Source of the DNA: Takakia lepidozioides
Lineage: Eukaryota; Plantae; Bryophyta
Length of the DNA: 64,000 bases
Direction of reading: 5' to 3'
Assembly (NCBI GenBank): GCA_030704615.1
Contig: CM060732.1
Location: 54,374,001-54,438,000, forward strand
Part shown: one piece after another, positions 1 through 63,229 of the stretch
How positions within the stretch are numbered: the first letter of the stretch is position 1
How the letters are laid out: each line of letters begins with the position of its first letter
Program-made: the position numbers and the translations under genes
Notes under the pieces: model-generated
Database searches by the model: none
Seen by the model: only the letters and a program-made list of their open reading frames with translations
Told to the model about the DNA's origin: nothing

Positions 1-1698
1 TGTGCCAGCCTGGCTGCCCTTGATAAGGGCAAAAGGATCCATGCTGACATCATCAAAGCGAGAATTGCATCAGATATAAGTTGGAGAAACCTTGTTAACA
101 TGTATGCCAAATGTGGGAACATGAAGCATGCGCAGGAGGTGTTTAACAATATGACTGAGAAAGATGTGGTCGTGTGGAGTGCAATGATCTCAGGATATGC
201 TGAGCATGGTTGTTGTATGGAGGCTTTGGAGACTTATGAACAAATGATACGGAAAAGGGTGGCACCAGACAAAGTCACTTTTATTTGTGTTCTCAATGCA
301 TGTGCCAGCCTGGGAGCCCTGGAAAAGGGCAAAGAGGTCCATTTTGATATTGTTAAAGCTGGAATCGGGTCATACATCAATTTGGAGAATACGCTTGTGA
401 ACATGTATGCCAAATGTGGGAGCATGAAGGATGCACGGCTTGTATTTGACACTATGGCTGAAAAAGATGTGGTCTCATGGAGTGCAATGATTGCAGGATA
501 TGCGCAGCATGGTTGTATTATGGAGGCGTTTGAGACTTATGAGCAAATGACACAGGAAGGGGTGACGCCTAACAACGTAACATTCATTTGTGTTCTCAAT
601 GTGTGTGCGAGCCTTGCTGCCCTACACAAGGGCAAAGAAGTCCATGCTGACATCATCAACTCTGGTATTCCGCAGGATATTTTTCTGGGGACTGCCCTTG
701 TCAACATGTATGCCAAATGTGGCAACATGAAGGATGCACGTCAAATGTTTGACAACATGGCTGAACAGGATGTGGTCTCATGGAGTGCGATGATTGCAGG
801 ATATGCTCAGCATGGGTGTGGTAGGGCAGCTCTCCAACTATTTGAACAAATGCAAGAGAAAGGCTTGAAGCCAAATGGTATCACCTTTATGTGTGTTCTC
901 TCTGCATGTAGTCATGTAGGCCTAGTGGATGAAGGCCGTCACTACTTTGATTCCATGAGTCAGGATCATAGCCTCAATCCTATGGTGGAACATTTTGGCT
1001 GCATGGTGGACCTTCTTGGCCGTGCAGGCCGAGTGGATGAGGCAGAGGACTTTATTGACAAAATGCCAATGGAACCAGATGCTGGCATATGGGGGGCCTT
1101 GCTTGGTGCCTGCAGAATTCATGGCAATGTGGAGGTCGCAGAACGTGTGGCCAGATGCCTTCTGAAATGGGACCCACAGCACGCAGCAACTTACATGCTT
1201 CTGTCAATCGTCTATGCTGCTGCGGACAGGTGGGCTGATACAGCAAAGGTGCGAAAAATGATGCAGTACAGAGGTGTCAGAAAGGAGCCGGGGCAGAGCT
1301 GCATTGCGGTGAACAACCAGTTGCATACATTCAAGTTCATTGTCGAAGAGAAGCAGCATCCACAAATCAAAGAGATCCATGCTGAGCTGAAGAGATTATC
1401 TGGGTGGATGAAGGAGGCTGGGTACATTCCTGAGACACCCTTTGTATTGCATGAGGTTGAGGAGCAACGCGAATCATATCTTTGCCACCACAGTGAGAAA
1501 CTGGCGATTGTTTTTGGGCTCATCAGCACTCCCCCTACAGCATCTATCTGTGTCATCAAGAACCTCCGGGTGTGTGGTGACTGCCACGCGGCCACCAAGT
1601 TCATCTCAAAGGTTACTAAGCGAGAAATTCTTGTACGGGATGCCAACCGCTTTCACCACTTCCAAGATGGGGTTTGTTCTTGTGGGGATTATTGGTGA
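1..1698 (+). CDS. PLS-class pentatricopeptide repeat protein with E1/E2 and DYW deaminase domain (organellar C-to-U RNA editing factor); 5' end lies upstream of the window
   Basis: Frame 1 is open from base 1 (CASLAALDKG...) to TGA at 1696-1698, with no intron. P-L-S triplets recur every 303 nt (MYAKCG at 100, 403, 706). These are followed by the E domain, a PG-box-like EPGQSCI, HSEKLA, CGDCH and the terminal CSCGDYW. Confidence 0.96.
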   Translation, partial: CASLAALDKGKRIHADIIKARIASDISWRNLVNMYAKCGNMKHAQEVFNNMTEKDVVVWSAMISGYAEHGCCMEALETYEQMIRKRVAPDKVTFICVLNACASLGALEKGKEVHFDIVKAGIGSYINLENTLVNMYAKCGSMKDARLVFDTMAEKDVVSWSAMIAGYAQHGCIMEAFETYEQMTQEGVTPNNVTFICVLNVCASLAALHKGKEVHADIINSGIPQDIFLGTALVNMYAKCGNMKDARQMFDNMAEQDVVSWSAMIAGYAQHGCGRAALQLFEQMQEKGLKPNGITFMCVLSACSHVGLVDEGRHYFDSMSQDHSLNPMVEHFGCMVDLLGRAGRVDEAEDFIDKMPMEPDAGIWGALLGACRIHGNVEVAERVARCLLKWDPQHAATYMLLSIVYAAADRWADTAKVRKMMQYRGVRKEPGQSCIAVNNQLHTFKFIVEEKQHPQIKEIHAELKRLSGWMKEAGYIPETPFVLHEVEEQRESYLCHHSEKLAIVFGLISTPPTASICVIKNLRVCGDCHAATKFISKVTKREILVRDANRFHHFQDGVCSCGDYW

Positions 1699-8022: not shown

Positions 8023-8090
8023 TTGAGCACAACGCTCTAGGGACACTGCCCAAGGGAAGTGGGTGGGAGAAGATTATACCACACCGACAA

Positions 8091-8258
8091 CCAAGTTGTA
8101 GCCGAGTGGTAATGGGCACATACCACCTCGAAAGTGGTTGTGGGTTCAATCCACCCTTGGTGTCACAAAGGTGTCCACTTTCCTAGCGAAAGGCAGTAAC
8201 CTTTCGGGGGTGAAGAGACACCATAATATACGCTTCCTTCTGGAGGCGACAAATATAA
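8091..8258 (+). mobile_element. tRNA-derived SINE family B, copy 1
   Basis: A-box tagccgagtggtaa, B-box ggttcaatcc, structured body and AT-rich tail. Flanked by ataccaca-ccgacaa (8076-8090) and ataccacatccgacaa (8259-8274). Confidence 0.8.
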
Positions 8259-8414
8259 ATACCACATCCGACAAGGTCGCAGGATTTGAACCCAGAATCA
8301 CCTGGGTGGCACTCAGTGCTCTCAACTAAGGTTTCCTCTTAAGAAAAAAAGGAAAATAGTGAACTAATTACAATTTGCTGCACGGCAAGTCCACCGTAAG
8401 CCAGCTGCATTGCG

Positions 8415-17371: not shown

Positions 17372-19304
17372 TAAACGGCAACCACTACGTATGATTTATC
17401 CTGTGCCTTCCCCAGGTGCAGGGATTATGATCTTGGGTATTAGTTGGGGTAGGAATGAACTTCAGGAGATCTGTGGTTTGCCAGAGTAGATGTATAAATG
17501 TAGAGTATAATATGGACAGGGATTGATGCTAAGAGATTTGGGCATTTTAAGCCAGTCCATTAGATGTGCAGTCAGACTACCACTCTTGTAGCATAGGTTT
17601 CACCTACATGTAGGTGAATGGCCGCTTAGTGGCCCTTTCTTGTTTCAAGTCAAAGGTGACTGAGGTTGGAATAGGGTGATTGGAGAAAGTAAGGACTGTG
17701 GAGATGAAAGCTCAGTTGCCACTGAGCAATGTTAATGTGACCATCAAACATGCGGGCTCCTCGACGGGGGACTTCATGAAGCCTAGTGAGATAATCCTTG
17801 ACGCTGGACGACAGGAGGACAAGTTGAAAATTACGTGCTTTTCCACAATTCAAGTAGCTGTACAGAAGCTCGTGGCTTAAGAGACATGGGGGAGTGTCAG
17901 AGGTAAATCTAGGTATCTGATTGGCTTGTCTTGTCTTGGTGGTCCTATACCTCAGATAGGAGGGATGGAGGTGAAAGGAAGTTATTTACTTGTCATCTCG
18001 TATGCGAAGCAGTTGTAATAATAGCTTTGTACTTGCTCTGCAAAGCCGATGTCTATTGCTAAGACTGACTGCTACAGACTGTGGAACTGTAGTATGAGAA
18101 GGCAGAGGTGAGAAAAAGACTGAGATTCCATTGCGTGATGGTAAGGGGCAAGGAGACGGGGAACAAGTGTTTCTCAGGCATTGTAATAGTGGTTGGTCTT
18201 CTGGAAAATGAGGCGCATTGCAGCCCATGATTTAGTCTGAAGGGTGTCATCATCATCAATGTGCTAACGAATGGCTTAAACAACCAGTACTAGTATGTGG
18301 GTCTGGTGTCCAGGACCCCAGCTATCCCCAATGAAAATAAGTTCTTTGAGCTGATTGCAGATTCCAAGGTTCATAACCTTTTAGGGTATCTAAGCTATAC
18401 CAAGGGAGTTCAGAGTTCTTTTAGAGCTACATCTGGACAACTACATACATTCGAGTTTCAATGGTTAAAATGATTGATGACATCGCAGAATGGATATTAG
18501 GAGACTCATTGGCAAAATCTAAGAGGTATTCTCGAAAAGCTGGTCTAGTGTTGGTAAGTTTTATGATTTGGTATCCAAACTAATATAAAGACAGTTTAGT
18601 ATGTCTTAGAGATGTGCAGACAGCGATCCATCTGAAGTCATGTGAATGATAGCTTGATAAATTTATAGCCGGCCACTAAGAAACAGAGGGAGATTGATGA
18701 GTGGTTCACTAGTCATGGAACAAGATCTAATCTGTTACCTGGAAGCAGAAATCTGACAAATTTTCAGGTTTTTATGGAGCTGAAGAGCTTCAGGACAAGG
18801 TTTGTTTCTACAAATGATGTCATCAACAACGCCACTGCCTCTTTTCAGCCACTCGTGTTCTGATACAAAATGGAGATCAACTCATGACCCGCATTAAGTT
18901 TGGTCATACACTTCATCCAATCATTGCCTAAAGTTGAAGGAAATTGCCAGCCGTGCAGCTTGACAGAGAGTTTGTTGTTTTATGGTTGTTTCAAAGTCCA
19001 GCTTGAGCAGCCAGCGGAAATGAGAGTCATTTCCCCTTGCAACTTCTAAGTTCGGGGTTGGGCAGCTTTAGTAATTTATGGTCCCTCTTTGCTGCATGGA
19101 TGACACTTTCTTTTTGAGCACTTTGAGTGGTGCTCTTTCCTGCTCAACGGTAAACTAACTTTGATCAGTCACAGGCACTTCGAGCAGTCAATTTTGATCA
19201 GTCACAGTCACTTTGATAGGTCAATTTTGTCTCCACAGTGATGGGTACTAGCGCCCAAGATCGTTCAAACAGTGGCAAAGGTACTAGTAAAAGAGAAACA
19301 AGCT

Positions 19305-20579: not shown

Positions 20580-21420
20580 ATGTAGGGCGGGCCCGCCCCT
20601 ATTCTTTTTTGTTTACGTAATGCAAACTCTGAATTGGGAGTTGAATGCTCACATGCGAAGCTTGCCGGTTCGGAGCTAACCGGAGGGCCCCGTGGGTCCG
20701 CGGTCAAACCCTCACCCCCCCCTTCCCTCGTGTATGCTTCACGCCCATCCGAGGGTCCTGCGCTCCATGTTCCCGCCCCGCCACTCCCCTGCTCCCCGCT
20801 CCCCCACTCCCTTGTTATTGGAGCGGCGAAGCAGTAAAACAGGGGAGCAATAGCACAAATGAGCTGAGAGTAGTAACAAGGAGCGGTAACAGGGGAGCAG
20901 CGGAGCAATAACACAGGGGAGCAAAGAGACATGGGGGAGCGATATGTATGTGGGAACAGGGGAGCTGCGATTGGGAACAGGGGAGCGGAGATCCCCTCCT
21001 TGTTCCCATGCCCACTCCCTTATCCCTGTCCCTTGTCCTCGCTCCCCTATTCCCGGTCCGCGCTCCCTTCCTCACCCTGTGGAACACGGCTCGCTCCCCT
21101 GTTCCCGGTCCCCGGTCCCCTCCTCGTCCTATAGAATACGGCTCACTCCCCTGTTCTCGGTTCCCAGTCCCCTCCCACCCTATGGAATATGGCTCGTTCC
21201 CCTGTTCCCGGTCCCCGCTCCGCTCTTTGCGCTGTGGAACACGGCTCGCTCCCCTCTCGCTCCCCTGTCCCAATGGGGAGGAGCCGGGAACAAGGGAGCA
21301 AACTTGGAGAACGTTTGGGAACAGGGTCCTAAAAGTAGGGAGCATGAGGAGGGAGCATGAACATTCCCCACCTTCCCATATGGGGATGAGATTTGACTGG
21401 TAGGCTCTCGGGCCCCACCA
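20580..21420. repeat. GC-rich foldback-like repeat of inverted gctccc/gggagc arrays, with an internal ~52-bp x4 minisatellite (21079-21256)
   Basis: Alternating blocks of gctccc and gggagc. The unit (g/a)tggaa(c/t)acggctcgctcccctgttcccggtcccc starts near 21079, 21131, 21182 and 21235. Confidence 0.65.
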
Positions 21421-21770: not shown

Positions 21771-24274
21771 AGAGAAAGAGAGAGAGAAGACTCCGACCGA
21801 AGCTGGCGTAACTAAGAGCCATTTCGTCTTGCGGCTATTGCCCCCTTTCAGGGGTGGGTGTCAAGGACGAGAACATGACTGAACACAAACAAGATATCAG
21901 ACTAGAGGTACAAGACTAGACAAATCAAGGTCGGTGTGGCCGAATGCATGATGGGTAATATGAATCAAGATGAGCTTTATAACAATGGACAAGAGTACAA
22001 GATACTGGAACTTGACTCGAATACTGGAATGCTGGGAACTGGACTGGGGTATTAGATACTGAAAACTGGACTGGAGTACTGGGACTGGGAACAAGAGTAG
22101 CTTGAACTTGTGTTGGCGGGATTGAAGAGTGTCCAGTCTCACCTCCTATATATACTGGCTACTATGAGGTTCCCTAAGAGGCTTCCCCAAAAGAGGTTTC
22201 TTGATGGAGAAGTTTCCAAGGTTAAACAAAGGTTTCTTGATGGAGAAGTTTCTTTAAACAAAAGAGGTATTTTGATAGAGAAGTTTCCTCCAAATGAAGC
22301 TTCCCGAGCAGTTTCCAAGTTACTTTCGGTAATTTGGTAAACTCTCGGTAACTTGGTAACTTATAGTAACTTATGGTAAATCATGATAGATCATGATAAC
22401 TTTCGATAGCATGGTAACTTGGTAACTTCTGATATTTATTCCTGATAAGTTCCTCTGGGCTATGTCCGTGACATCACCCCCTCCTCTAGCGCCGAGTTCC
22501 TTGAGGAGCAGTAAAATCTTGGACTTGCTTAGAGTTGGAGAAACTCTCTCCTTAATGTGTATCAGATACACTGAATGTGGAGTCTTCACCTTGATGGCTG
22601 ATATCTTCGTTGTGATGTTTTATTGACGTGTAGCTCGGGGATTAGCTGTATATCGTTGATGAAACTCTTGGACTTTGTCAGATGCATTGGCAAAGTTGGA
22701 TGAAGGTTCCCACGTTCGTTCGCTGATGTCGTAGCCTTTCCAATGTACGAAATATTCAAGACGTTTATACTTGATGCGAGAGTCTAGGAATTCGTCGACT
22801 TCATACTTGATTTCCTGATTGACTTCCATTGGTAGAGGTGGTACGGAAACTCTCCCTGGAATATTCGATGGATGATACAACTCCAATAATGAAACAAGAA
22901 AAACTAGATGGATGCGTATACTTGGGAGTTCAAGCCGAAAACTGACCGGATTTATTTGTCGAATAATTTTGAATGGTCCCAGACGTTGATAATCCAACTT
23001 CTTTTATGGTCACGAGGTTTGTATGTCCCGTCAAAGAAGCCACACACGATCTCCGACCTTGAACTGGGATTGGAGTTGACGATGTTGATCTGTATACTCC
23101 TTGTATTGTTTTTGAGCTTCTGCGAGGTGGAATGTAAGCTCCTTGTGAATCGTAGCAAGGTTTTCTGCAGCAGGGCTTCCAACAATCTTCATGTGGAAAT
23201 GATTTATTCGAGGATGATGACCATAATTGGAGAAAAATGAAGTTTGTTTGGTCGAAAAATGTGTAGTGTTGTTGTAGGCAAATTCAACCAATGACAGAAG
23301 GTCCGTCCAATTATCTTGGTGATAATTTATCGTACATCGAAGATACTGCTCCAAAATCTGGTTTACGCGTTCGATTTGACCATCAGTCTGTGCTAATCTT
23401 TGGTTCTCTCGTAATCTGTTGGAGAGGAACCGTTGTAGTAGGAGCTGTTGCAGTAGAGACTCGTATGGTTGAAGTTCCATTGTTCGACTCTTTTAATTCT
23501 GAAATTTGTTGTTGCAAATTGTGGAGGGCGTTGTCAAGATCTTGAGACTGATCAGCTTGTAATTGGGCGGTAGAGGTACGAAGTTCTTGCATCTGGAGCT
23601 GAAGACTCTGCAATGTGGCGACCATTTCCGCAAATGTGCCTTCCATCTTAACTAACTAAGGAACAAACTTTAGTCTCGTCAAACTGTCAAGGACGAGAAC
23701 ATGACTGAATACAAACAAGAGATCAGACTAGAGGTACAAGACTAGACAAATCAAGGTCGGCGTGGCCGAATGCATGATGGGTAATATGAATCAATATGAT
23801 CTTTATAATAATGGACAAAAGTACAAAATACTGGAACTCGACTCGAATACTGGAATGCTGGGAACTGGACTGGGGTATCAGATACTGAAAACTGGACTGG
23901 ATTACTGGGACTGGGAACAAGAGTAGCTTGAACTTGTGTTGGCGGGACTGAAGAGTGTCCAGTCTCGCCTCCTATATATACTGGCTACTAGGAGGTTCCC
24001 TAAGAGGCTTCCCTAAAAGAGGTTTCTTGATGGAGAAGTTTTTTTAAACAAATGAGGTATCTTGATAGAGAAGTTTCCTCCAAAGAAAGCTTCCCGAGCA
24101 GTTTCCCAAGTTACTCTCGGTAATTTGGTAAACTCCCGGTAACTTGATAACTAATGGTAACTTATGATAAATCATGATAGATCACGGTAATTTTCGGTAA
24201 CATGATAACTTGGTAACTTCTGGTATTTAATCCTGGTAAGTTCCTCTGGGCTATGTCCGTGACAGTGGGCCCTA
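21771..24274 (-). mobile_element. 87-nt-class mini-retroposon, copy 1, split by the LTR element
   Basis: 21771-21858 plus 24270-24274 is colinear with 25017-25103. Candidate TSD taaaac at 21765-21770 and 24275-24280. Confidence 0.75.
21859..24264 (-). mobile_element. Non-autonomous Ty3/gypsy chromovirus (Tcn1/Tf1-like) with a large internal deletion
   Basis: TG...CA LTRs at 23685-24264 (5') and 21859-22473 (3'), 5-bp TSD gtggg (21854-21858 and 24265-24269), and PPT aggagggggtga next to the 3' LTR. The 1.2-kb internal region holds the Gag N-terminus (ATG at 23646) joined to the integrase C-terminus (QTDGQIERVNQILEQYLR, GPF motif) and a chromodomain (YEVDEFLDSR...YFVHWKGY...TWEP), with frameshifts. 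Confidence 0.96.
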
Positions 24275-24324
24275 TAAAACCCTCATACATACCATAGAAA
24301 AAGAATATTTAATAATTAAGTAAT

Positions 24325-24577: not shown

Positions 24578-25016
24578 AGTAATATTGTAATATCATACAC
24601 ATAATAGCATTACGCCTACAAATGATAATGATGACTTGAGTTTACAAAGAGTTCCAGGTCTCATGCAATGTGGAAGTGTATAATCAGTCGCTGATGATTG
24701 ATGTGGTGTGTATCTTCTACAATGTTTCTACACCATCTACTCGTTTATATGAGTACATATACATAGATATTATGAATCATTTGTAAGATTATGATGTTCA
24801 TCTTGTTCCTTTACATCTTTCCGTTCTTGTGCTTTATGCTTCGAGCAATTTTGACGAGGTCGGCGATGAGCATAACTGCAGTCTCGCAATCATTTAGTAA
24901 ATGATACCCGTTCACAACAAGACATGCTTGTTGCACAAAACATTTTAGATTAAGCATCCATCTATTTCTTTATTGTACATAATACAAATTTGTATTGATG
25001 TTTTGGCCACTTTCTA

Positions 25017-25103
25017 GAGAGAGAGAGAGGACTCCGCCCGAGGCCAGCGTAACTAGAGTCACTTCGCCTTGCGGCTACTGCTCCCTTTCGGGGGTGGGCC
25101 CTA
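25017..25103 (-). mobile_element. 87-nt mini-retroposon, copy 2 (structured core plus (TC)n tail)
   Basis: Flanked by a perfect 13-bp TSD tggccactttcta (25004-25016 and 25104-25116). Homologous to the split copy at 21771. Confidence 0.85.
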
Positions 25104-25289
25104 TGGCCACTTTCTATTTTATATACATAAGCTTCTGTTTTCTTTGTACATGCAATGTGATTCTTTTCAATGAACACCCACCAACACAATACTAATACAA
25201 ACATGAAAAGTACTGTAAATACTATACAATGATGGGTACACATGAAAAGACATGATGGAAACTGGATCTACTCAATCCATTTTTCACTT

Positions 25290-27029: not shown

Positions 27030-27425
27030 ACAGTGACTGGGAGCACTAGCTCACAAACCAGGCCTCTTAATTGTGTGAGAGGAAAAAATAACCTCTTTAA
27101 GAATAACCTTGCCATGAGGTGCCGGGTGCCAAGCAGAAGGCTTAAGGGACACCTCCCAAGAGAAGGGGGACAAAAACGGCTTAAGGGAAACATACCACAT
27201 CAGACAACTAGCATGCAGCCCAGTGGTAATGGGCACATACCATGTTGGATGTGGTTGTGGGTTCAAACCAGGGTCTGGGGTGTCATGAAGGTGTCCATCT
27301 TTCACCTGAAAGGCAGTAGCCCTTGTGGTGAAGTGACACCATGAATTACGCTCCCTTCGGGAGGCGTTATACATATATATACCACATCCGACAATGTAGC
27401 AATATTTGAGCCCTGAATCACCTGC
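27030..27425 (-). mobile_element. SINE family A copy carrying a SINE-B insertion
   Basis: Colinear with 24349-24530 once 27208-27394 is removed. Confidence 0.75.
27208..27378 (+). mobile_element. tRNA-derived SINE family B, copy 2
   Basis: A-box cagcccagtggtaa, B-box ggttcaaacc and (AT)n tail. 16-bp TSD ataccacatc(a/c)gacaa at 27192-27207 and 27379-27394. Confidence 0.8.
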
Positions 27426-29100
27426 CAGAATTTTTTATTGTTTTTGAGACGTCAAACATCGAACAACTTTGGCATAGTGATTAGGAAAATAAGGCCGCAT
27501 TACAAGTGATCGTGGATTCAAAGCCTTGTAGATATATGTTGGATGTCACCCATTCTATGAATCCAACTGTAAAATGGGGTCATTGGATCAATCAACTTCT
27601 TATTGTTATTGTGTGATTGCATTGCCCCATCACGGCCGAAAGGAAGGCTACTTATACGCTTGCTTTGGCAAGTGTTCTTCTTTTCAAGACTTGCCGACTT
27701 TCTCAAAAAAAAAAAAAACCCGTGGAAAATAACTTTAAGCTTACCTCTTACACAGATCATCCGGTCAGTAACCTGGCAAACTTCCTCGAATTTGCGAATA
27801 AAAATGAAAGGGTGTAGGCTGGTAGCCTGGTAAGCATAGGGTGAAAGGAACCCTGAACACCGAACAGAAAACAAAGAGATAGGATAGAAGATAGGCACAG
27901 CACACACCGTGCCAAACGGGGACGAGGGTGCCATGTGACGCAGGCTGCAGCGGCTGCTCCGGTAGCTCCACGTGCCGCCAAACGGCATGCGCGCTGCATC
28001 CGCCATCTCATCTCGTCCAGTCACACGCTGTCGGCCCACGTTGCGTCCGCTCCGCACCTCTGACCTAACCCTAACCCCCGCGTGGTTGCAGAAGGCGCAG
28101 GTGTTGCCTGTCTTTATATACTGCAACATGCTGCGGATGGCGGCAAACGGTATGGGATAACTGTTCTAAATTTTGCTATTATTATTTTTCTGCTCTGCAA
28201 ATTCTACGAAGGTAAAATGGCGGCTGGCTATGATAGTGAGCGACTATGCACCAGTACTGAGAATAGTGCTATCTTTCAATCATTGATCATCGTTCATCCA
28301 CCTTCACGCCTGCCTAAGTACTGTGGTCCTTGTGTGGCGCATGGATGACTCACTATAGGACTAAACTCATCCATAGCTACATCTATCTTACATCCATTGT
28401 GGGAGCGCATGGATGATTCAGTAGAGGACGAAACTCATCCATGAGCACAGATTGAAAGCCCACAGACCATCCTTCATCAATTCTCCTGACCAAAACTGGA
28501 AAGTAACTGGTGGAATTTGGATGAAGAGCGTCTCTATCAGCAGTGCATTCCTGGAGGATGTACTCGCACATAATCATCCTTCCAAACCGAGTCCGTCGAT
28601 GGCGACTGGATGAGGTTAGACATCGTCCATAATTTATTAATGGATGACATCCCTTCATCTTCATCCATATCGGCAACTCCCCTAAGGATGATTAAATTTG
28701 ATCAACTGTCTCCTTTGCCGGCATCTGAAGTCAGCCGCTCTATATATAGGACGGACGGGTGCAGATGCGGGCAAACGGTATGGGATAATGTGGCGCGAAG
28801 AGGGAGTCAGCTTATTACATAGTGCCCAATAAAATATGGAAAGCAATCTGGAGGGTGATTTGATACCTTTGTCAGCACAGTCATTGCAGTCAAATCCAGT
28901 CGTCCACTAATCCTGGTTAGCGTGTGATTGACTAACATTGATATAAACAATAAGATATACATAGAATAAATAAATAAAAAACGTGGGTTATTAAGTTCAG
29001 CTGACACAAAAACGGTTGCATACTTAGTAGATACTAAGTTAGATACTGCGCATGGCATCTCATATTAAACACTTCACACAAACTGTGTGTCAGCTTAATT

Positions 29101-55631: not shown

Positions 55632-58600
55632 CTAACATTGATAGAGTGGCAGGGTCACCCTGGACTTCCAAATAAATCCGAGGGAACCCGACCGGGACTT
55701 TCGAAACCGCCGGGGTTCCGCAGTCTTTTCATCCTTTTTGCCATTATTTTTCACAGGCTGCTCTACATCGGAGCACTGCCCAGAGAAGGAGACCAAAGGG
55801 GCAGAATGAGAAAAGACTGTCTCTTTTTGCCGCTGCTCGCGAAAATGCTGCAGCAGTTTTTGAGCTTTATCTTGGCCCCTTGGATTACCACCAACCGAGA
55901 GACCCACGAGTGCAGGGATGACACCCTCCCGCAACACCAATTGACTATGCTGCAAACTATTGGTACAAAGCAACAGCAGAGTGGCAGCGGCGTGCTCTTT
56001 CTCCTTAATACTTCCCGTCTCAAGGATTTCAGCCAGCACAGCAATACCACCCTCTGTTTTTGCTATTGTGGATCTGCCTTCTTCGATCGAAGACAGATTG
56101 TATAAAAGTGCCACACATTTCTCTAACAGATCAACCTTCCGAAGGCTTAGCAAATGGACAAGAATAGGGATGGCACCTGCATGCACGACCCGGGGTCGGT
56201 TACCCAAGAATATGGTTAGATTGTACAAAGTGGTCAATGCATCCTTCCTTCCCTGGTTTGAACCCGAGATCAATAACTGCACCAGCAGTGGTATTGCACC
56301 GGACGACCCAATACAAGCTTTGTTCTCGTTCAGGCACGAGAGAGTCAGCAGAGCCGCCACCGCTCCTTCCTTGGATGCTCGACTGGCTCCAGCTTTCAGC
56401 AATTCCACAAACAAGGGCACAGCCCCCACACCTACCACAGCTGCCTTATTCCTACATCAAATTCAACAGAGGCCAACACTCACCCTCTCAGTGCCAACCC
56501 TGTGCTATTGCACCAAACAGCTGACCCTCTACCCCATGCACCCCATCTTGGAAGTCCCCCTGTTGAAGTAAACTGAAAAATCCATTGGAAAGTGATGGAA
56601 AACAAGAACAGAATCCCTGCAAGTCTGGGCACATGTATCACTAAATACATTGACAATCTCATTCGACTTGAAAACAGGTCTAAAAACTATTTGAGTAGAA
56701 AATCAACGGGCGAGCTAACCTGTCATCACTGATCGCAACATTGAGGAGTGCAAGAGCTCCTGTCTCCTGTGCACTCTGATCATCAACAGCCACAGCAGTA
56801 CGAAGGAGCTCCACAAGTGCAGGGATGACACCCCCATCCCCAATCTGTGCCCGCACTTTTGCATTGGTTTTTGCCAACACTCGAATCTTTTCGGCTGCTT
56901 GGCAGCGAAGCTGCAGGGAACCATCTGTGAGGTCGGTCACCAACCTCTCAAAACAATCCACCCACTGCTCATCTGTTAGCTCCCTTATTTCTGCACCTTC
57001 CTGTACCAATCTGCATGCATGTGCGTCTCCTGTCTCAGAGACTGCTTCATCTTTTCCCACAGTTCCTCCCTCAACACCGCTGACATAGTTGTGGCCAGGA
57101 GTCTTGGCTGGATTTCCACTTGCTTTTGTCTGAGCTCCACTAACAGCATCATCCACAGGCACAACCCTCACCTCTTTGAGCTGCTCCTCACTCCCCACTT
57201 TGACCAGTTCAGTGGCAGAAAAGAGCTCCCATCTCCACGAAGTGACAGGGGAAGGAGGTGGAGAGGGGGGATTCGGGACAGCAATCCCATGTGCCTCACA
57301 CCAACTGGCTATTAGGCCCTTCACACAATAGTTAGGAGTGAGGTTAAGGTGTCCCAGAACCTGCCGAGTCTTTGGGCAAGTAATATGACCCTCCTGTACA
57401 CCACCACAGGACAGCAGCACAACTCAATTATTCTACTCAAAATCATCAAACCGCACAAATGGTAAGCTTTCCTGGATATCACAGAAGGGCCAAGCTCACC
57501 ACCACCGGGAGGGCCACAAACTGAGTAAACCCTCATCCTAGTAAGCATCAAATCAACATGTGTGCTCTCGACAATGTTCCAATCAGCTTCATATTGTGAA
57601 TCTATGGGACGAGTAAAGATACCTGGAACCATTTCTCAATGCAGACACGCTCGTACGTTTGACCCGATGCCACTATCACAGGCTCTGACATGAGCTGAAG
57701 TGAAATGGGACATCGCAGCTCTTCAGGCGCCAAAGGCATCCTTGGCGGGCTGCCGCAATCCTCTTGGCCACTGTAATCCACCAAGGTTGTGATAGCCACC
57801 TCAGAACATCGACATTCAGTGCAATGGAGGTGGGTCTGTGTAGCAGAGTAGGTATGGCCCTCTGCTTCGCCAGAACCTGTGAGTTTACCTGACCCCCAGC
57901 CCCTGTCAGAGACAGGCCACCTTGCAGGCTCTCCAGCTGCTTGCAAGTCATTCGCCATGCGCAGAACATTGTTGAATTTCTTCATAAGTTGCAGAATGTG
58001 AAGAGTGACAGCCTCTTTCCTCCTATCTTCCTCATACCGTGCTTTCTCCAGTAAGCGCTTGAGGGCTCGTTTTTCTACAAGGATGGCATCAGCAGAGACC
58101 AAGCCCAGCCGAGTAGCTACCTGACTGAAAGTCTCCTGCTCCGCCTGCGGATTTTCATATTGAGGTCCCTTCTGTTTCTGCAACAACAGAGATATGATCT
58201 CTGCTCCTATTTGCTTCTCCACTGGATCCAGCTGGAACAAGGTTTGGCCCAATTCAACCTGAATTTCAGCAATCTGCACACACATTTCCATGGGCCCGTC
58301 ACTCTGCAGCCTCCAAGATGACACAGACATCGACTCCCCTTTGTCTACAGATCTAGGGTAAGGCCAACAGAACCAAACCTGAGAAGCAATTTCCTGAGGA
58401 ACCAAAATTGCAATGCGCCTCAGACTTTGCTCCAGCCCGTCCTTCACTTCATCGAATCGTGATAGCATGGACTCTCCCTTGATCGCCTGCAGAAGAAGGG
58501 CCAATCCACTTATAACTACCAGAGCATGATCACACATCTCTATGAAGTAAGCACGCGCAGATTGGAGAAAGGGCAGGCGTCCGGCAATCACCCAGGTCCA

Positions 58601-59331
58601 GATGAAGGACAAAGTGATGTGGGGAATGAAAACTAAACCGTGGTGGAAGCTTGCCAACATTCATATGGGTAAACCCCAACACTCACCATACCAAAAGCAT
58701 TCAATGGCGTGCCCCGGTAATTTTGTAGCAACCTGTTTTTACCAGGAAAACAAAGAGACACAGGCAGGAGTACCAGGTAGAGCTTGCTGGAATCTGCACA
58801 ATAATGAAGAAGAGAACGTGCTTTGTCAAGGGCCAACTGCAATGCACAAAGTGCCTGTAGGCCAGATTTACGCCAACGGGCCCGCTCCACATCCAGTGCT
58901 GGTCCCACTGTCTGCATCCGCTTCACCAGCGCCGCCAACGCCCCGCACATCCCTCTATGTAGCTGTGCACTCTCCCTTTCATATTAGTTGGTTACTCCTC
59001 ACTCTCAATAAGCTAAGCACCTATTTTTGTCTCAATTCACCCATCCCCTAGAAAGGAAATGATAATTATGCTTATACAGAATGTCCTGATTCTACATCAC
59101 GTACGTGAAGGTATTGCGTGATGATGAATGCAACGGCAAGACAACCTCAAGCCCCCCAAGCCAGGCTGTGCATTAGGCCATCCAGATCCGACACTGTAGG
59201 AAAGACAACCTTCCAGAATAAACAGTTCTAGAAACAAACTACCTGCTCCATGTAAGAAAGAGCAAGAACAAAAAGGTGCATACCTGGGCATGCTTGGCTG
59301 CAGCAACGCTCTGCTCCACAGCAATGTCCAT
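55632..59331 (-). CDS. Plant U-box E3 ubiquitin ligase, UND-U-box-ARM (PUB6/7/45-like), about 829 aa, 6 coding exons
   Basis: Exons 59331-59284, 58962-58774, 58486-58379, 58273-57623, 57393-56720, 56451-55632; 2490 nt in frame, all introns GT-AG. UND domain: [10 protein letters not shown]...[12 protein letters not shown]-box: [44 protein letters not shown]...[17 protein letters not shown] repeats follow. Confidence 0.95.
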
Positions 59332-62300: not shown

Positions 62301-63229
62301 TCCCTCGGATGGACTCTCTTCTTTTTTTTTCCTTTTTTCTTTTCTTCTTCGTATTCATCCACTCCTCTATACACTATACACCTATTTTTACTTGTATTTG
62401 TATTCTTAATTATATTTTCCATTTTCATTTCTGTGAATGTCATGATTTTCGCACCAGAGTTTCCATCGGATAACAAGGAAGAAAAAAGAATCGTGGATTT
62501 ATGAAATAAGCCCAAAACAGATTTCGAGATATTTACACGCTGGATTTGAGATTTTGTGAGATTGTGAGAATACTTCCTTCACGTTAATAAATACGTACTT
62601 ATTCATCCTGAGTCCTCATCCATCATAAGGGACTTCTCATCCATGTCAGGGCCGGAATCACCGCCGGTATTCTCAGTATTTCCGGTAGTTCACCTACTTA
62701 CTTTCACTCATAGGCTTATTTACTGACTACTTACCATAGTCAATGTGGATGAGGGTGATAGTAGATTAGTGTAGTAAATCTGTAACTTACTAGTGATGGG
62801 GGATGCTCACAAGGCCAACCGAGCGAAAGAGTTGACGGTTATGTGGATGCAAATGGACCTTTAATTTTTTAGAAATTGGGTCCTTCCAACAGCACCTGAA
62901 CGGATTTATATTACTAGAAATGTATGTATTATTGGATTATTTATTTATTTATTTATTTTATTTTTGGAAATTTTCCAAATATTTCGTCGGATTTTGTATG
63001 GTGTAACGGTCGAGAGTAAGGGCCACTTTTTCACTTTACGGCTAGTACCCCTTTTGGAGGTGGGACCTATGGTGTAGGGGCCGACTTCATAGGAGGTATA
63101 AGATGTTTGAGGCAACTTCATCCAGGAACCTTAATGTTTGTTTCCATGGATGATAAATCTACTTACGGACATCTACTCATCCTTCACTCATTCCATAGTT
63201 GGTGGCACTTGGTACACCAATGTCACCGA

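What the first reader, a model, noticed from the sequence alone, without database searches (positions are those of the whole stretch)
25004..25116. 87-nt tRNA-less retroposon with a fixed 5' end at the base of a covarying three-way junction (loop-E motif)
Seen: two independent insertions with different TSDs (13-bp tggccactttcta here; candidate taaaac for the copy at 21771/24274) both start at the same nucleotide on the minus strand (UAGGGCCCAC...) and end in (UC)n. Neither has Pol III A/B boxes. The RNA folds as P1 - CA - hairpin (CCC GAAA GGG) - GC AGUA - hairpin (GCC GCAA GGC) - GAA GU - P1', followed by a UUCG-type hairpin. The same architecture forms the body of SINE-B with compensatory changes: P1 AGGGCC/GGCUCU versus GGUGUC/GACACC; P2 CCC/GGG versus CUUUC/GAAAG; P3 GCC/GGC, GCC/GGU, ACC/GGU. 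GCAGUA/GAAG is nearly invariant (GCAAUA/GAAA in one copy). Established: AGUA/GAA is the bulged-G loop-E/sarcin-ricin motif also found in 5S rRNA, and random 5' truncation during TPRT normally gives variable ends. Inference: a conserved functional RNA fold that defines its own 5' end, by self-cleavage or by blocking 5'-3' exonucleases, and is mobilised by a LINE. I cannot match it to hammerhead, HDV-like, twister or pistol cores.
Basis: partly seen in the sequence, partly recalled or inferred. Interest (0 to 1): 0.85.

Follow-up and report, generated by a model that had tools for sequence, protein, structure and literature searches.

The report
Promoter-less mini retroposon: structured LINE-type tail
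An 88-base mobile element in a land-plant genome consists only of the folded RNA "tail" that SINEs borrow from LINEs; it is present in many copies that nearly all start at the same base, so it is a real, unusually minimal retroposon, but nothing here shows that the RNA cuts itself.

Summary
Copy 1 lies on the minus strand at 25104-25017, between perfect 12-13-bp target-site duplications, and ends in (TC)6. Copy 2 is the same element, split by a 2.4-kb LTR/TRIM insertion. A covariance model built from these two copies also finds the two SINE-B tails (E 2.6e-6 and 5.7e-5) and two decayed mini copies.

The three-way junction and the 3' UUCG-type hairpin are supported: 89% of cells are paired, 9 of 19 pairs change on both sides, and slid controls reach at most 64%.

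In DNA contigs of the same organism, 568 contigs carry the element. 130 of them lose homology at exactly 25104/25105, with unrelated upstream sequence, so the fixed 5' end is family-wide.

Rfam (ribozyme, xrRNA, 5S and SRP models included), ARAGORN and a B-box scan found nothing.

Best reading: a tail-only, LINE-dependent non-autonomous retroposon whose template is a discrete RNA ending at the base of the fold. How that end is made was not tested. Self-cleavage is disfavoured, because SINE-B moves with its head still attached to the same junction.

Other readers of this scan noted the same RNA elsewhere in this genome. The closest precedent is the Chlamydomonas SINEX elements with RandI/Dualen tails.

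The parts
25017..25104 (-). Mini retroposon copy 1 (88 nt). Three-way junction 25104-25055: P1 25102-25097 with 25060-25055; J 'CA' 25096-25095; P2 25094-25090 with 25085-25081, GAAA loop; CAGUA 25080-25076; P3 25075-25073 with 25068-25066, GCAA loop; GAAGU 25065-25061. Linker AGUUACG 25054-25048. Hairpin P4 25047-25043 with 25038-25034. (TC)6 tail 25028-25017.
   Evidence: family-wide boundary at 25104/25105
25105..25116 (.). 5' copy of the target-site duplication, tagaaagtggcc (plus an ambiguous a at 25104)
25004..25016 (.). 3' copy of the target-site duplication, tagaaagtggcca
24265..24275 (-). Mini copy 2, 5' piece ATAGGGCCCAC; its last 5 bases are one copy of the TRIM's TSD
21771..21858 (-). 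Mini copy 2, 3' piece: second cccac TSD copy, the rest of the junction, a UUCG hairpin and a (TC)n-like tail. Flanked by gtttta, as is the 5' piece.
21859..24264 (.). LTR/TRIM-like element inserted into copy 2. LTRs 21859-22473 and 23685-24264, 94% identical, TG..CA ends.
8168..8256 (+). SINE-B copy 1 tail: the same junction, linker and hairpin behind a tRNA-like head with A and B boxes
   Evidence: (E 5.7e-5)
27288..27374 (+). SINE-B copy 2 tail: same architecture
   Evidence: (E 2.6e-6)
62995..63070 (-). Decayed mini-type copy starting ATAGGUCCCAC behind unrelated sequence; the terminal hairpin is lost
   Evidence: E 0.005
18988..19065 (-). Probable old, internally damaged mini-type copy
   Evidence: E 0.12; weak

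Best explanation
This is a tail-only, non-autonomous retroposon: a minimal SINE without a head.

The whole element is the 3' recognition module that stringent-type LINEs and their SINEs carry. It has three parts: a three-way junction with a loop-E-like AGUA/GAA arm, a short conserved linker (UACGC), and a terminal UUCG hairpin followed by a (TC)n repeat on which reverse transcription is primed.

A partner LINE's reverse transcriptase binds this module on a short RNA and copies it into a staggered chromosomal nick. That gives TSDs of about 6 to 13 bp.

Because the enzyme copies to the end of its template, the fixed 5' end means there is one discrete RNA species ending two bases upstream of P1. 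I think this RNA is most likely the stable 3' fragment left when longer junction-bearing transcripts are trimmed from the 5' side down to the base of the folded junction. Those transcripts could be the LINE itself, SINEs, or host read-through RNAs. The trimming could be an exonuclease stall or a host endonuclease, rather than self-cleavage.

Shown here: insertion with TSDs, the family-wide fixed 5' end, the conserved fold, and the absence of a type-2 Pol III promoter. Inferred: the LINE partner, the role of the fold in reverse-transcriptase binding, and the origin of the 5' end.
For: - TSDs and the shared start in the window copies.
-, DNA contigs of the same organism: 568 contigs laid. Summed depth over 25054-25108 reaches about 1.6e5 against about 50 on the flanks, roughly 10^3 copies. 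This is a rough figure; the tool warns that summed depth is not a copy number.
- 107 contigs end homology at 25104 and 23 at 25105. The loose-end consensus agrees at only 0.36-0.44, against 0.73 for the internal break at 25055, so upstream sequences are unrelated.
- full-length copies with other flanks on both sides (X1 record 7; X5 record 9, from another study), and (TC)n tails in other copies (loose ends at 25016).
- Fold: a model built from the two minis recovers the SINE-B tails. 89.4% of cells are paired against at most 64% for slid partners. 9 of 19 pairs change on both sides (P1: 3 of 6; P4: 2 of 5), and 0 of 500 shuffles reach the covariation score.
- The sites that vary at 10% or more across contigs are either G-C to G.U, lie in loops, or restore pairs that the window copy has lost (table 3).
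- Homology between SINE-B and the mini begins within 2-4 nt of the mini's first base, so the same module boundary recurs in a second lineage.
- Established knowledge: stringent LINEs need a 3' stem-loop plus short repeats, and 5' truncation is normally scattered (PMC3747384, PMC4176376). RandI/Dualen LINEs of Chlamydomonas have SINE partners with tRNA heads and with heads of unknown origin, and microsatellite tails (PMC3747384, tables 1-3).
Against: - No LINE with this tail is in the window, so the partner was not seen here. It is known only from unchecked first-reader notes.
- No free 88-nt RNA was observed. The runs guessed to be RNA show the junction only inside contigs of 0.3-2.2 kb (table 8).
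- Covariation rests on five sequences from essentially two lineages, in an alignment fitted to the model.
- The minis have no thermodynamic signal.
- De Bruijn contigs break at repeat edges and collapse repeated upstream sequence. Contig counts therefore over-represent unique flanks and cannot give the fraction of 5'-truncated copies.
- A subset of contigs (those ending at 25105) has a SINE-A-like body upstream. Some copies are therefore tails of a longer SINE.
Confidence: 0.62

Rival explanations
1. Master-copy SINE. One or a few source copies lie behind an outside promoter (a Pol III type-3-like upstream promoter or a Pol II start site) that happens to start transcription at the first base. 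All other copies are dead on arrival, and the fold serves only to bind the reverse transcriptase.
For: - Any SINE-like family has a fixed 5' end, so no special RNA chemistry is needed.
- Copies show a broad spread of divergence, with identity classes 9/82/268/209, as expected for long-lived source genes.
- A loose A-box-like TAGCCGCAAGG exists in P3.
Against: - There is no B box and no tRNA, 5S or 7SL match.
- A start exactly 2 nt before P1 would be a coincidence.
- The SINE-B head-tail joint falls at the same module boundary in a second, diverged lineage. That fits an end set by the structure better than one lucky locus.
Confidence: 0.22
2. Self-cleaving ribozyme. The junction cleaves the transcript at its own 5' base, as HDV-like ribozymes do for R2 and L1Tc. 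That would set the 5' end and free the element from any host transcript.
For: - The 5' end is fixed at the base of a conserved fold.
- The junction strands are invariant.
- There is precedent in R2 and L1Tc (from my own knowledge, not checked here).
Against: - No match to any Rfam family at E up to 10 over 24900-25220 on both strands. I take the library to include the hammerhead, HDV-like, twister, pistol and hatchet models.
- The strand order P1-hairpin-hairpin-P1'-hairpin is not the HDV nested pseudoknot.
- SINE-B copies, and by other readers' notes full-length LINEs, were copied with sequence still attached upstream of the junction. Cleavage there cannot be efficient.
Confidence: 0.07
3. 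Not a discrete family. These would be ordinary 5'-truncated LINE or SINE copies whose ends coincide by chance or by an alignment artefact.
For: - Only two clean copies are in the window.
- Contig alignments also break artefactually at 25055, where there is an indel (tables 4 and 7).
Against: - 130 contigs end at 25104/25105, and no other 5' position reaches the 13-contig level of the listed rows.
- The loose ends there are long (median 255) and unrelated. At the artefactual break at 25055 they continue the element (agreement 0.73).
- A third window copy starts at the same base.
Confidence: 0.04

Closest known systems
SINEX-1/-2/-4_CR of Chlamydomonas reinhardtii (SINEs with RandI/Dualen LINE tails and heads of unknown origin; PMC3747384, tables 1-2)
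   Same: Green-lineage short retroposons without a recognised Pol III-gene head. They carry the 3' tail of a non-L1 LINE and end in a microsatellite ((ATT)n or (CTTT)n there, (TC)n here). tRNA-headed sister SINEs use the same type of tail (SINEX-5/6 there, SINE-B here).
   Different: This element is in a land plant. It has no head or body at all: it starts 2 nt before the tail's own junction.
Stringent-type LINE/SINE 3' tails (UnaL2/UnaSINE1, ZfL2; PMC4176376, PMC3747384)
   Same: A conserved terminal stem-loop with a conserved loop, followed by short tandem repeats. Stems covary while loop and flank bases stay fixed. The tail is shared between the LINE and its SINEs.
   Different: An extra three-way junction with a loop-E-like arm lies upstream of the terminal hairpin. 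The tail also circulates alone as a high-copy family.
R2 SIDEs and the L1Tc/NARTc, ingi/RIME pairs (LINE-derived non-autonomous elements whose 5' end is set by an HDV-like ribozyme or LINE 5' signature; from my own knowledge)
   Same: Non-autonomous derivatives of a LINE without a Pol III head, with a precise 5' end. They depend on co-transcription or processing.
   Different: Those keep a separate 5' module (a ribozyme or Pr77) joined to the 3' UTR. Here a single structured domain sits at the 5' end, and no ribozyme signature was found.
Flavivirus xrRNA / sfRNA
   Same: Similar strand order (P1 - hairpin - hairpin - P1' - downstream linker). The RNA end lies a few bases upstream of P1, leaving a stable 3' fragment.
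   Different: No Rfam family matched at all, so no xrRNA model did. The hairpin loops are not conserved between the minis and SINE-B, so there is no loop-downstream pseudoknot. Only an untestable complementarity between the linker UACGC and the GC-GUA junction strand exists. Resistance was not assayed.
5S rRNA loop E / sarcin-ricin loop
   Same: 5'-AGUA / GAA-3' flanked by Watson-Crick or G.U pairs and capped by a short stem with a GNRA loop (GCAA). This is the bulged-G motif signature.
   Different: No 5S rRNA match in Rfam. The motif abuts the junction directly. SINE-B has non-GNRA loops.

Membership tests
tRNA-derived (type-2 Pol III) SINE | Internal A box and B box, tRNA-like head | tested here: not met
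   No B box within 2 mismatches and only a loose A-like match. ARAGORN found nothing. Rfam gave no tRNA match. The SINE-B heads do have boxes at positions 11 and 55.
Non-LTR retroposon inserted by target-primed reverse transcription | Target-site duplications of variable length and sequence, a defined 3' tail, no terminal inverted repeats | tested here: met
   A perfect 12-13-bp TSD for copy 1 and a 5-6-bp TSD for copy 2. (TC)n tail in the window copies and in other contigs (table 7).
Stringent-type LINE 3' tail module | Terminal stem-loop with covarying stem and conserved loop, followed by short tandem repeats | tested here: met
   P4 is CCGGC-UUCG-GCCGG in the family consensus and CGCUUCC-UUCU-GGAGGCG in SINE-B. 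2 of 5 pairs change on both sides. Tails are (TC)n or (TA)n-like.
Stringent-type LINE 3' tail module | The same sequence at the 3' end of an autonomous LINE of the same genome | not testable with these tools
   No LINE ORF in the window. The metagenome scan gave only two chance bacterial hits. Known only from unchecked notes s1-479344, s1-459696 and s1-473479.
Known self-cleaving ribozymes (hammerhead, HDV-like, twister, twister-sister, pistol, hatchet, hairpin, VS) | Match to the family's covariance model or conserved core | tested here: not met
   Rfam 15 at gathering score over the whole window found 0 matches. At E up to 10 over 24900-25220 the only match was an irrelevant miRNA outside the element.
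Known self-cleaving ribozymes | Site-specific self-cleavage in vitro | not testable with these tools
   Needs a bench assay.
Exoribonuclease-resistant RNA (xrRNA) | Match to known xrRNA models; a ring-forming pseudoknot; XRN1/XRN4 stall | tested here: inconclusive
   No Rfam match. No conserved loop-downstream pairing. The linker-junction complementarity is invariant and so untestable. The biochemical feature was not assayed.
5S rRNA-derived SINE (SINE3) | Homology to 5S rRNA | tested here: not met
   No 5S_rRNA match at E up to 10.
Loop-E / sarcin-ricin (bulged-G) motif | AGUA opposite GAA, closed by canonical pairs on both sides | tested here: met
   Present in 3 of 5 aligned copies (copy 1 and both SINE-B tails), with AAUA/GAA in copy 2. 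Closed by C-G plus G.U on the junction side in copy 1 and SINE-B2, and by P3 on the other side. This is sequence-level only; the 3D fold was not tested.

The most novel reading that the evidence does not exclude
The junction is a new kind of 5'-end-defining RNA module. It would be a cellular or retroelement counterpart of viral xrRNAs, or a substrate mimic for a host RNase. It would turn any host transcript that runs through a copy into a ready template for a LINE reverse transcriptase. The element would then be a retroposon that needs no promoter of its own. The tail RNA it releases would also be the raw material onto which tRNA heads were joined to make SINE-B-type SINEs.
Probability: 0.2. 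Interest if true: 0.85.

Novelty: new variant of a known kind. Interest (0 to 1): 0.5.

Why it matters
SINEs are normally explained as a Pol III head that provides transcription plus a LINE tail that provides reverse transcription. A high-copy family made of the tail alone, with a precise 5' end, raises the question of how a retroposon without a promoter keeps producing templates.

If the fold sets its own end, that would be a new route to mobility, and the first xrRNA-like or processing element in a plant retroelement. It would also give a concrete intermediate for how SINEs are assembled.

Even on the plain reading it documents a stringent, non-poly(A) SINE/LINE-type system in a land plant. 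The 2013 survey I read lists land-plant SINE/LINE pairs only with RTE or L1 partners (PMC3747384).

Tried and rejected
- Rfam at gathering score on the whole window, and at E up to 10 on the element and on SINE-B: nothing relevant.
- ARAGORN: no tRNA anywhere in the window, not even in the SINE heads.
- Metagenome scan with a 19-specified-base junction pattern: two hits, both chance matches in GC-rich bacterial-looking contigs. No extra copies were obtained that way.
- The search of earlier findings by sequence: blank.
- Minimum-free-energy folding. The minis do not beat shuffles, and the (UC)n tail mispairs with GGGAG. The SINE-B tails are significant (z -3.3 to -5.1), but their MFE is an elongated alternative fold rather than the junction. 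I therefore dropped thermodynamics as evidence for the junction.
- Search for a LINE in the window. There is no ORF over 180 aa with a retroelement domain; the long ORFs are a DYW-PPR and a PUB-ARM gene.
- Literature. I found no paper linking exoribonuclease-resistant RNAs to retrotransposons, and none describing this element.
- The joint 25013>25175 in one contig is not a clean empty site, so I do not use it as evidence of insertion polymorphism.
- HDV-like fold: rejected on strand topology.
- A-box-like TAGCCGCAAGG: too weak, and it has no partner B box.

Full report
WHAT IS IN THE SEQUENCE

On the minus strand, copy 1 runs from 25104 (or 25103) to 25017. It reads (A)UAGGGCCCA, then a CCCCC-GAAA-GGGAG hairpin, CAGUA, a GCC-GCAA-GGC hairpin, GAAGU, GACUCU, the linker AGUUACG, a decayed hairpin, and GGAGUCC(UC)6. 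It lies between perfect direct repeats tagaaagtggcca at 25116-25104 and 25016-25004.

Copy 2 is the same element in two pieces. ATAGGGCCCAC is at 24275-24265 and the rest is at 21853-21771. A 2,406-bp LTR/TRIM-like element at 21859-24264 separates the pieces. It has TG..CA ends, a 5-bp duplication cccac, and LTRs of 615 and 580 nt that are 94% identical. Copy 2 is therefore older than that insertion.

The two minis are 85.5% identical over 76 nt, and 10 of their 11 differences are transitions. The flanking repeat of copy 2 is only gtttt(a).

A covariance model built from the two minis with the proposed structure was run over the whole window with filters off. It returned:
- the two minis;
- the two SINE-B tails, at E 2.6e-6 and 5.7e-5;
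- a decayed third mini at 63070-62995, which again begins ATAGGUCCCAC behind unrelated sequence (E 0.005);
- a doubtful fourth copy at 19065-18988 (E 0.12).

IS THE 5' END REALLY FIXED?

The window alone gives three starts at the same base. The stronger test came from laying public contigs of the same organism on 24900-25220 at 80% likeness.

In the DNA run X1, 568 contigs were laid. Summed word depth on the flanks is about 50-200, but it rises to about 1.6e5 over 25054-25108. That suggests roughly a thousand or more copies. The tool warns that this is not a true copy number.

On the element's 5' side, 107 contigs lose homology exactly after 25104 and 23 after 25105. Every other loose end listed on that side comes from the smaller runs X5-X7 and rests on 1-3 contigs; 86 more rows are not shown.

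The loose sequence beyond 25104 is long (median 255 nt) and agrees between contigs at only 0.36. It shows nothing in common beyond a T-rich bias on the element strand. At the internal alignment break at 25055, which a one-base indel causes, the loose ends simply continue the element and agree at 0.73. The sharp 5' edge is therefore a property of the family and not an artefact.

All three window copies do read A-UAGG there.

Full-length copies with foreign sequence on both sides are also seen: X1 record 7, and X5 record 9 from a different study labelled plant metagenome. Other copies end in (GA)n on the plus strand, that is (TC)n tails.

Three caveats apply:
- De Bruijn contigs break at repeat edges and collapse repeated upstream sequence. 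Contig counts therefore favour unique flanks and cannot give the share of truncated copies.
- The 23 contigs ending at 25105 share an upstream ...GUGUCCC..UUGUGCUC... that resembles the 3' body of SINE-A. Some copies are thus tails of a longer SINE.
- The runs guessed to be RNA (X6, X7) show the junction only inside contigs of 0.3-2.2 kb. That shows neither the free RNA nor its absence.

IS THE FOLD REAL?

Thermodynamics does not help for the minis. Their z-scores run from 0.6 to -0.5, and the (UC)n tail mispairs with GGGAG. Only copy 2's junction domain gives the three-way junction as its minimum-energy fold.

The SINE-B tails fold significantly better than shuffles (z -3.3 to -5.1). Their minimum-energy fold, however, is an elongated alternative rather than the junction.

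The comparative evidence is better. On the model-based alignment of the five credible copies:
- 89.4% of cells are standard pairs, against 35-64% when partners are slid by 1-3 columns;
- 9 of 19 pairs change on both sides (3 of 6 in P1, 3 of 5 in P2, 1 of 3 in P3, 2 of 5 in P4);
- none of 500 shuffles reaches the observed covariation score.

This comes from five sequences of essentially two lineages, and the alignment is fitted to the model, so it is suggestive rather than conclusive.

The unpaired strands are the most conserved parts: CA, (G)CAGUA, GAAG and the linker UACGC. Across several hundred contigs, the only sites that differ from copy 1 in 10% or more of the depth fall into three kinds (table 3):
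- changes that restore pairs the window copy has lost (25059 in P1, 25046 in P4);
- a G-C to G.U change (25066);
- changes in loops (25071, which keeps GNRA, and 25040, UUCG to UUUG).

Several of these are CpG transitions, so I do not lean on them.

One correction concerns P2. The invariant GAAAGG is loop plus stem in the minis, but it is the 3' strand of the stem in SINE-B. P2 is thus a hairpin kept in place, not a strict column-by-column covariation.

The family consensus of the terminal hairpin is a clean CCGGC-UUCG-GCCGG. Both window copies have decayed from it.

The AGUA/GAA strands flank P3 and are closed on the junction side by C-G and G.U. That is the sequence signature of a bulged-G (loop-E / sarcin-ricin) motif capped by a GNRA hairpin.

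WHAT IT IS NOT

- Rfam finds nothing at gathering score in the whole window. Over the element and its flanks at E up to 10 on both strands, the only match is an irrelevant miRNA outside the element. I take that library to include the hammerhead, HDV-like, twister, pistol, hatchet, xrRNA, 5S, SRP and tRNA models.
- ARAGORN finds no tRNA.
- There is no B box within two mismatches and only a loose A-box-like string in P3. The SINE-B heads carry A and B boxes with the usual spacing.
- The strand order P1-hairpin-hairpin-P1'-hairpin is not the nested pseudoknot of HDV-like ribozymes.

WHAT IT MOST LIKELY IS

The element has variable target-site duplications and a microsatellite tail. Its terminal stem-loop has a covarying stem and a fixed loop. 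The same module sits behind the tRNA-like head of SINE-B.

This is the anatomy of the 3' tail through which stringent-type LINEs recognise their own RNA and that of their SINEs (PMC3747384, PMC4176376). The mini is that tail moving by itself.

No LINE is in the window, and a metagenome scan gave only chance hits. The partner therefore remains inferred. Other first-stage readers of this scan report the same junction at the 3' end of a Dualen/RandI-like (RLE) LINE elsewhere in this genome, but those notes are unchecked.

There is a published precedent in the green lineage. The Chlamydomonas SINEX-1/-2/-4 elements have RandI/Dualen tails, microsatellite ends and heads of unknown origin. SINEX-5/6 have tRNA heads on a RandI tail (PMC3747384, tables 1-3). 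That survey lists land-plant SINE/LINE pairs only with RTE or L1 partners.

HOW THE 5' END ARISES (INFERENCE)

In target-primed reverse transcription the cDNA runs to the end of the template. A family-wide fixed start therefore means one discrete RNA species ending two bases before P1. Ordinary LINE copies are truncated at scattered positions (PMC3747384).

Two observations bear on the mechanism:
1. SINE-B, and by the other readers' notes full-length LINEs, were copied with sequence still attached upstream of the junction. Cleavage at the junction base cannot be efficient. This weighs against a ribozyme and against efficient endonuclease processing. It does not weigh against a 5'-to-3' exonuclease stall, because Pol III triphosphate ends and caps protect intact SINE and LINE RNAs.
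2. The homology between SINE-B and the mini begins within 2-4 nt of the mini's first base. The same module boundary thus recurs in a diverged lineage. That fits an end set by the structure better than one lucky promoter.

My rough odds:
- about 0.35 for trimming or processing of longer transcripts down to the folded junction, with a stall more likely than a host endonuclease;
- about 0.22 for a master copy behind an outside promoter;
- about 0.07 for self-cleavage.

Two leads remain untested:
- Bases 2-4 of the mini are UAG, and SINE-B2 has UGA at the same place. The mini may therefore be exactly the LINE's 3' UTR, starting at the stop codon.
- The invariant linker UACGC is complementary to the GC-GUA of the junction strand. 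This is a possible pseudoknot that would compete with the loop-E reading.

VERDICT

The fold is conserved and a discrete 5' end is real, but self-definition of that end is unproven, and self-cleavage is the least likely version.

I file it as a new variant of a known kind: a LINE-tail-only, head-less SINE-like retroposon. Other windows of this same genome in this scan have yielded the same RNA (s1-488588, s1-479344, s1-460006 and others).

Noticed in passing
window 21859-24264: LTR/TRIM-like element, 2,406 bp. LTRs are 615 and 580 nt and 94% identical, with TG..CA ends, a 5-bp TSD cccac, and short internal ORFs only. It is inserted inside mini copy 2. The LTRs contain 30-36-nt sub-repeats.
   Followed up: partly
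window 27621-27690 (+): A third tail type. It has the same UAUACGC linker and a CGCUUGC-UUUG-GCAAGUG hairpin with a (TTC)n-like tail. A smaller fold without CAGUA/GAAG replaces the three-way junction. This suggests that the hairpin plus repeat is the constant part and the junction is an exchangeable module.
   Followed up: partly
window 8076-8274 and 27192-27394 (+): SINE-B sits in antisense SINE-A at the same site in both places, flanked by ataccacaYCNgacaa. The decayed mini at 62995-63070 has a similar string (acaccatacaaaatccgac) on its 3' side. Either insertion is site-preferring or a composite unit was copied.
   Followed up: no
window 25105 boundary, X1 and X5 contigs: 23 X1 contigs and 3 X5 contigs that end homology at 25105 share an upstream ...GUGUCCC..UUGUGCUC.. 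that resembles the 3' body of SINE-A. A SINE-A-like SINE therefore seems to exist with this junction as its tail.
   Followed up: no
window 25101-25103 (-), and 27288 region (+): Bases 2-4 of the mini are UAG, and SINE-B2 has UGA at the same place. This may be the stop codon of the partner LINE's ORF, so that the mini equals the whole 3' UTR.
   Followed up: no
window 25047-25051 versus 25076-25081 (-): The invariant linker UACGC is complementary to GC-GUA in the junction strand GCAGUA, with one bulged A. This is a possible pseudoknot that would exclude the loop-E pairing. There is no variation to test it.
   Followed up: no
window 24901-25013: The left flank of copy 1 is itself present in 2-4 diverged copies in the genome (depth 110-215 against about 50; X1 record 2 has 18 differences). 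One contig joins 25013 to 25175. This is not a clean empty site.
   Followed up: no
window 21021-21255: A C/T-rich tandem repeat of about 52 nt, four copies at 60-83% identity, lies inside a spurious 203-aa ORF.
   Followed up: no
window 100-1698 (+); 55632-58660 (-): An intact DYW-type PPR editing-factor ORF (532 aa, with PPR, E-motif and DYW deaminase domains) and a U-box/ARM (PUB) gene. These mark the window as land-plant nuclear DNA.
   Followed up: partly
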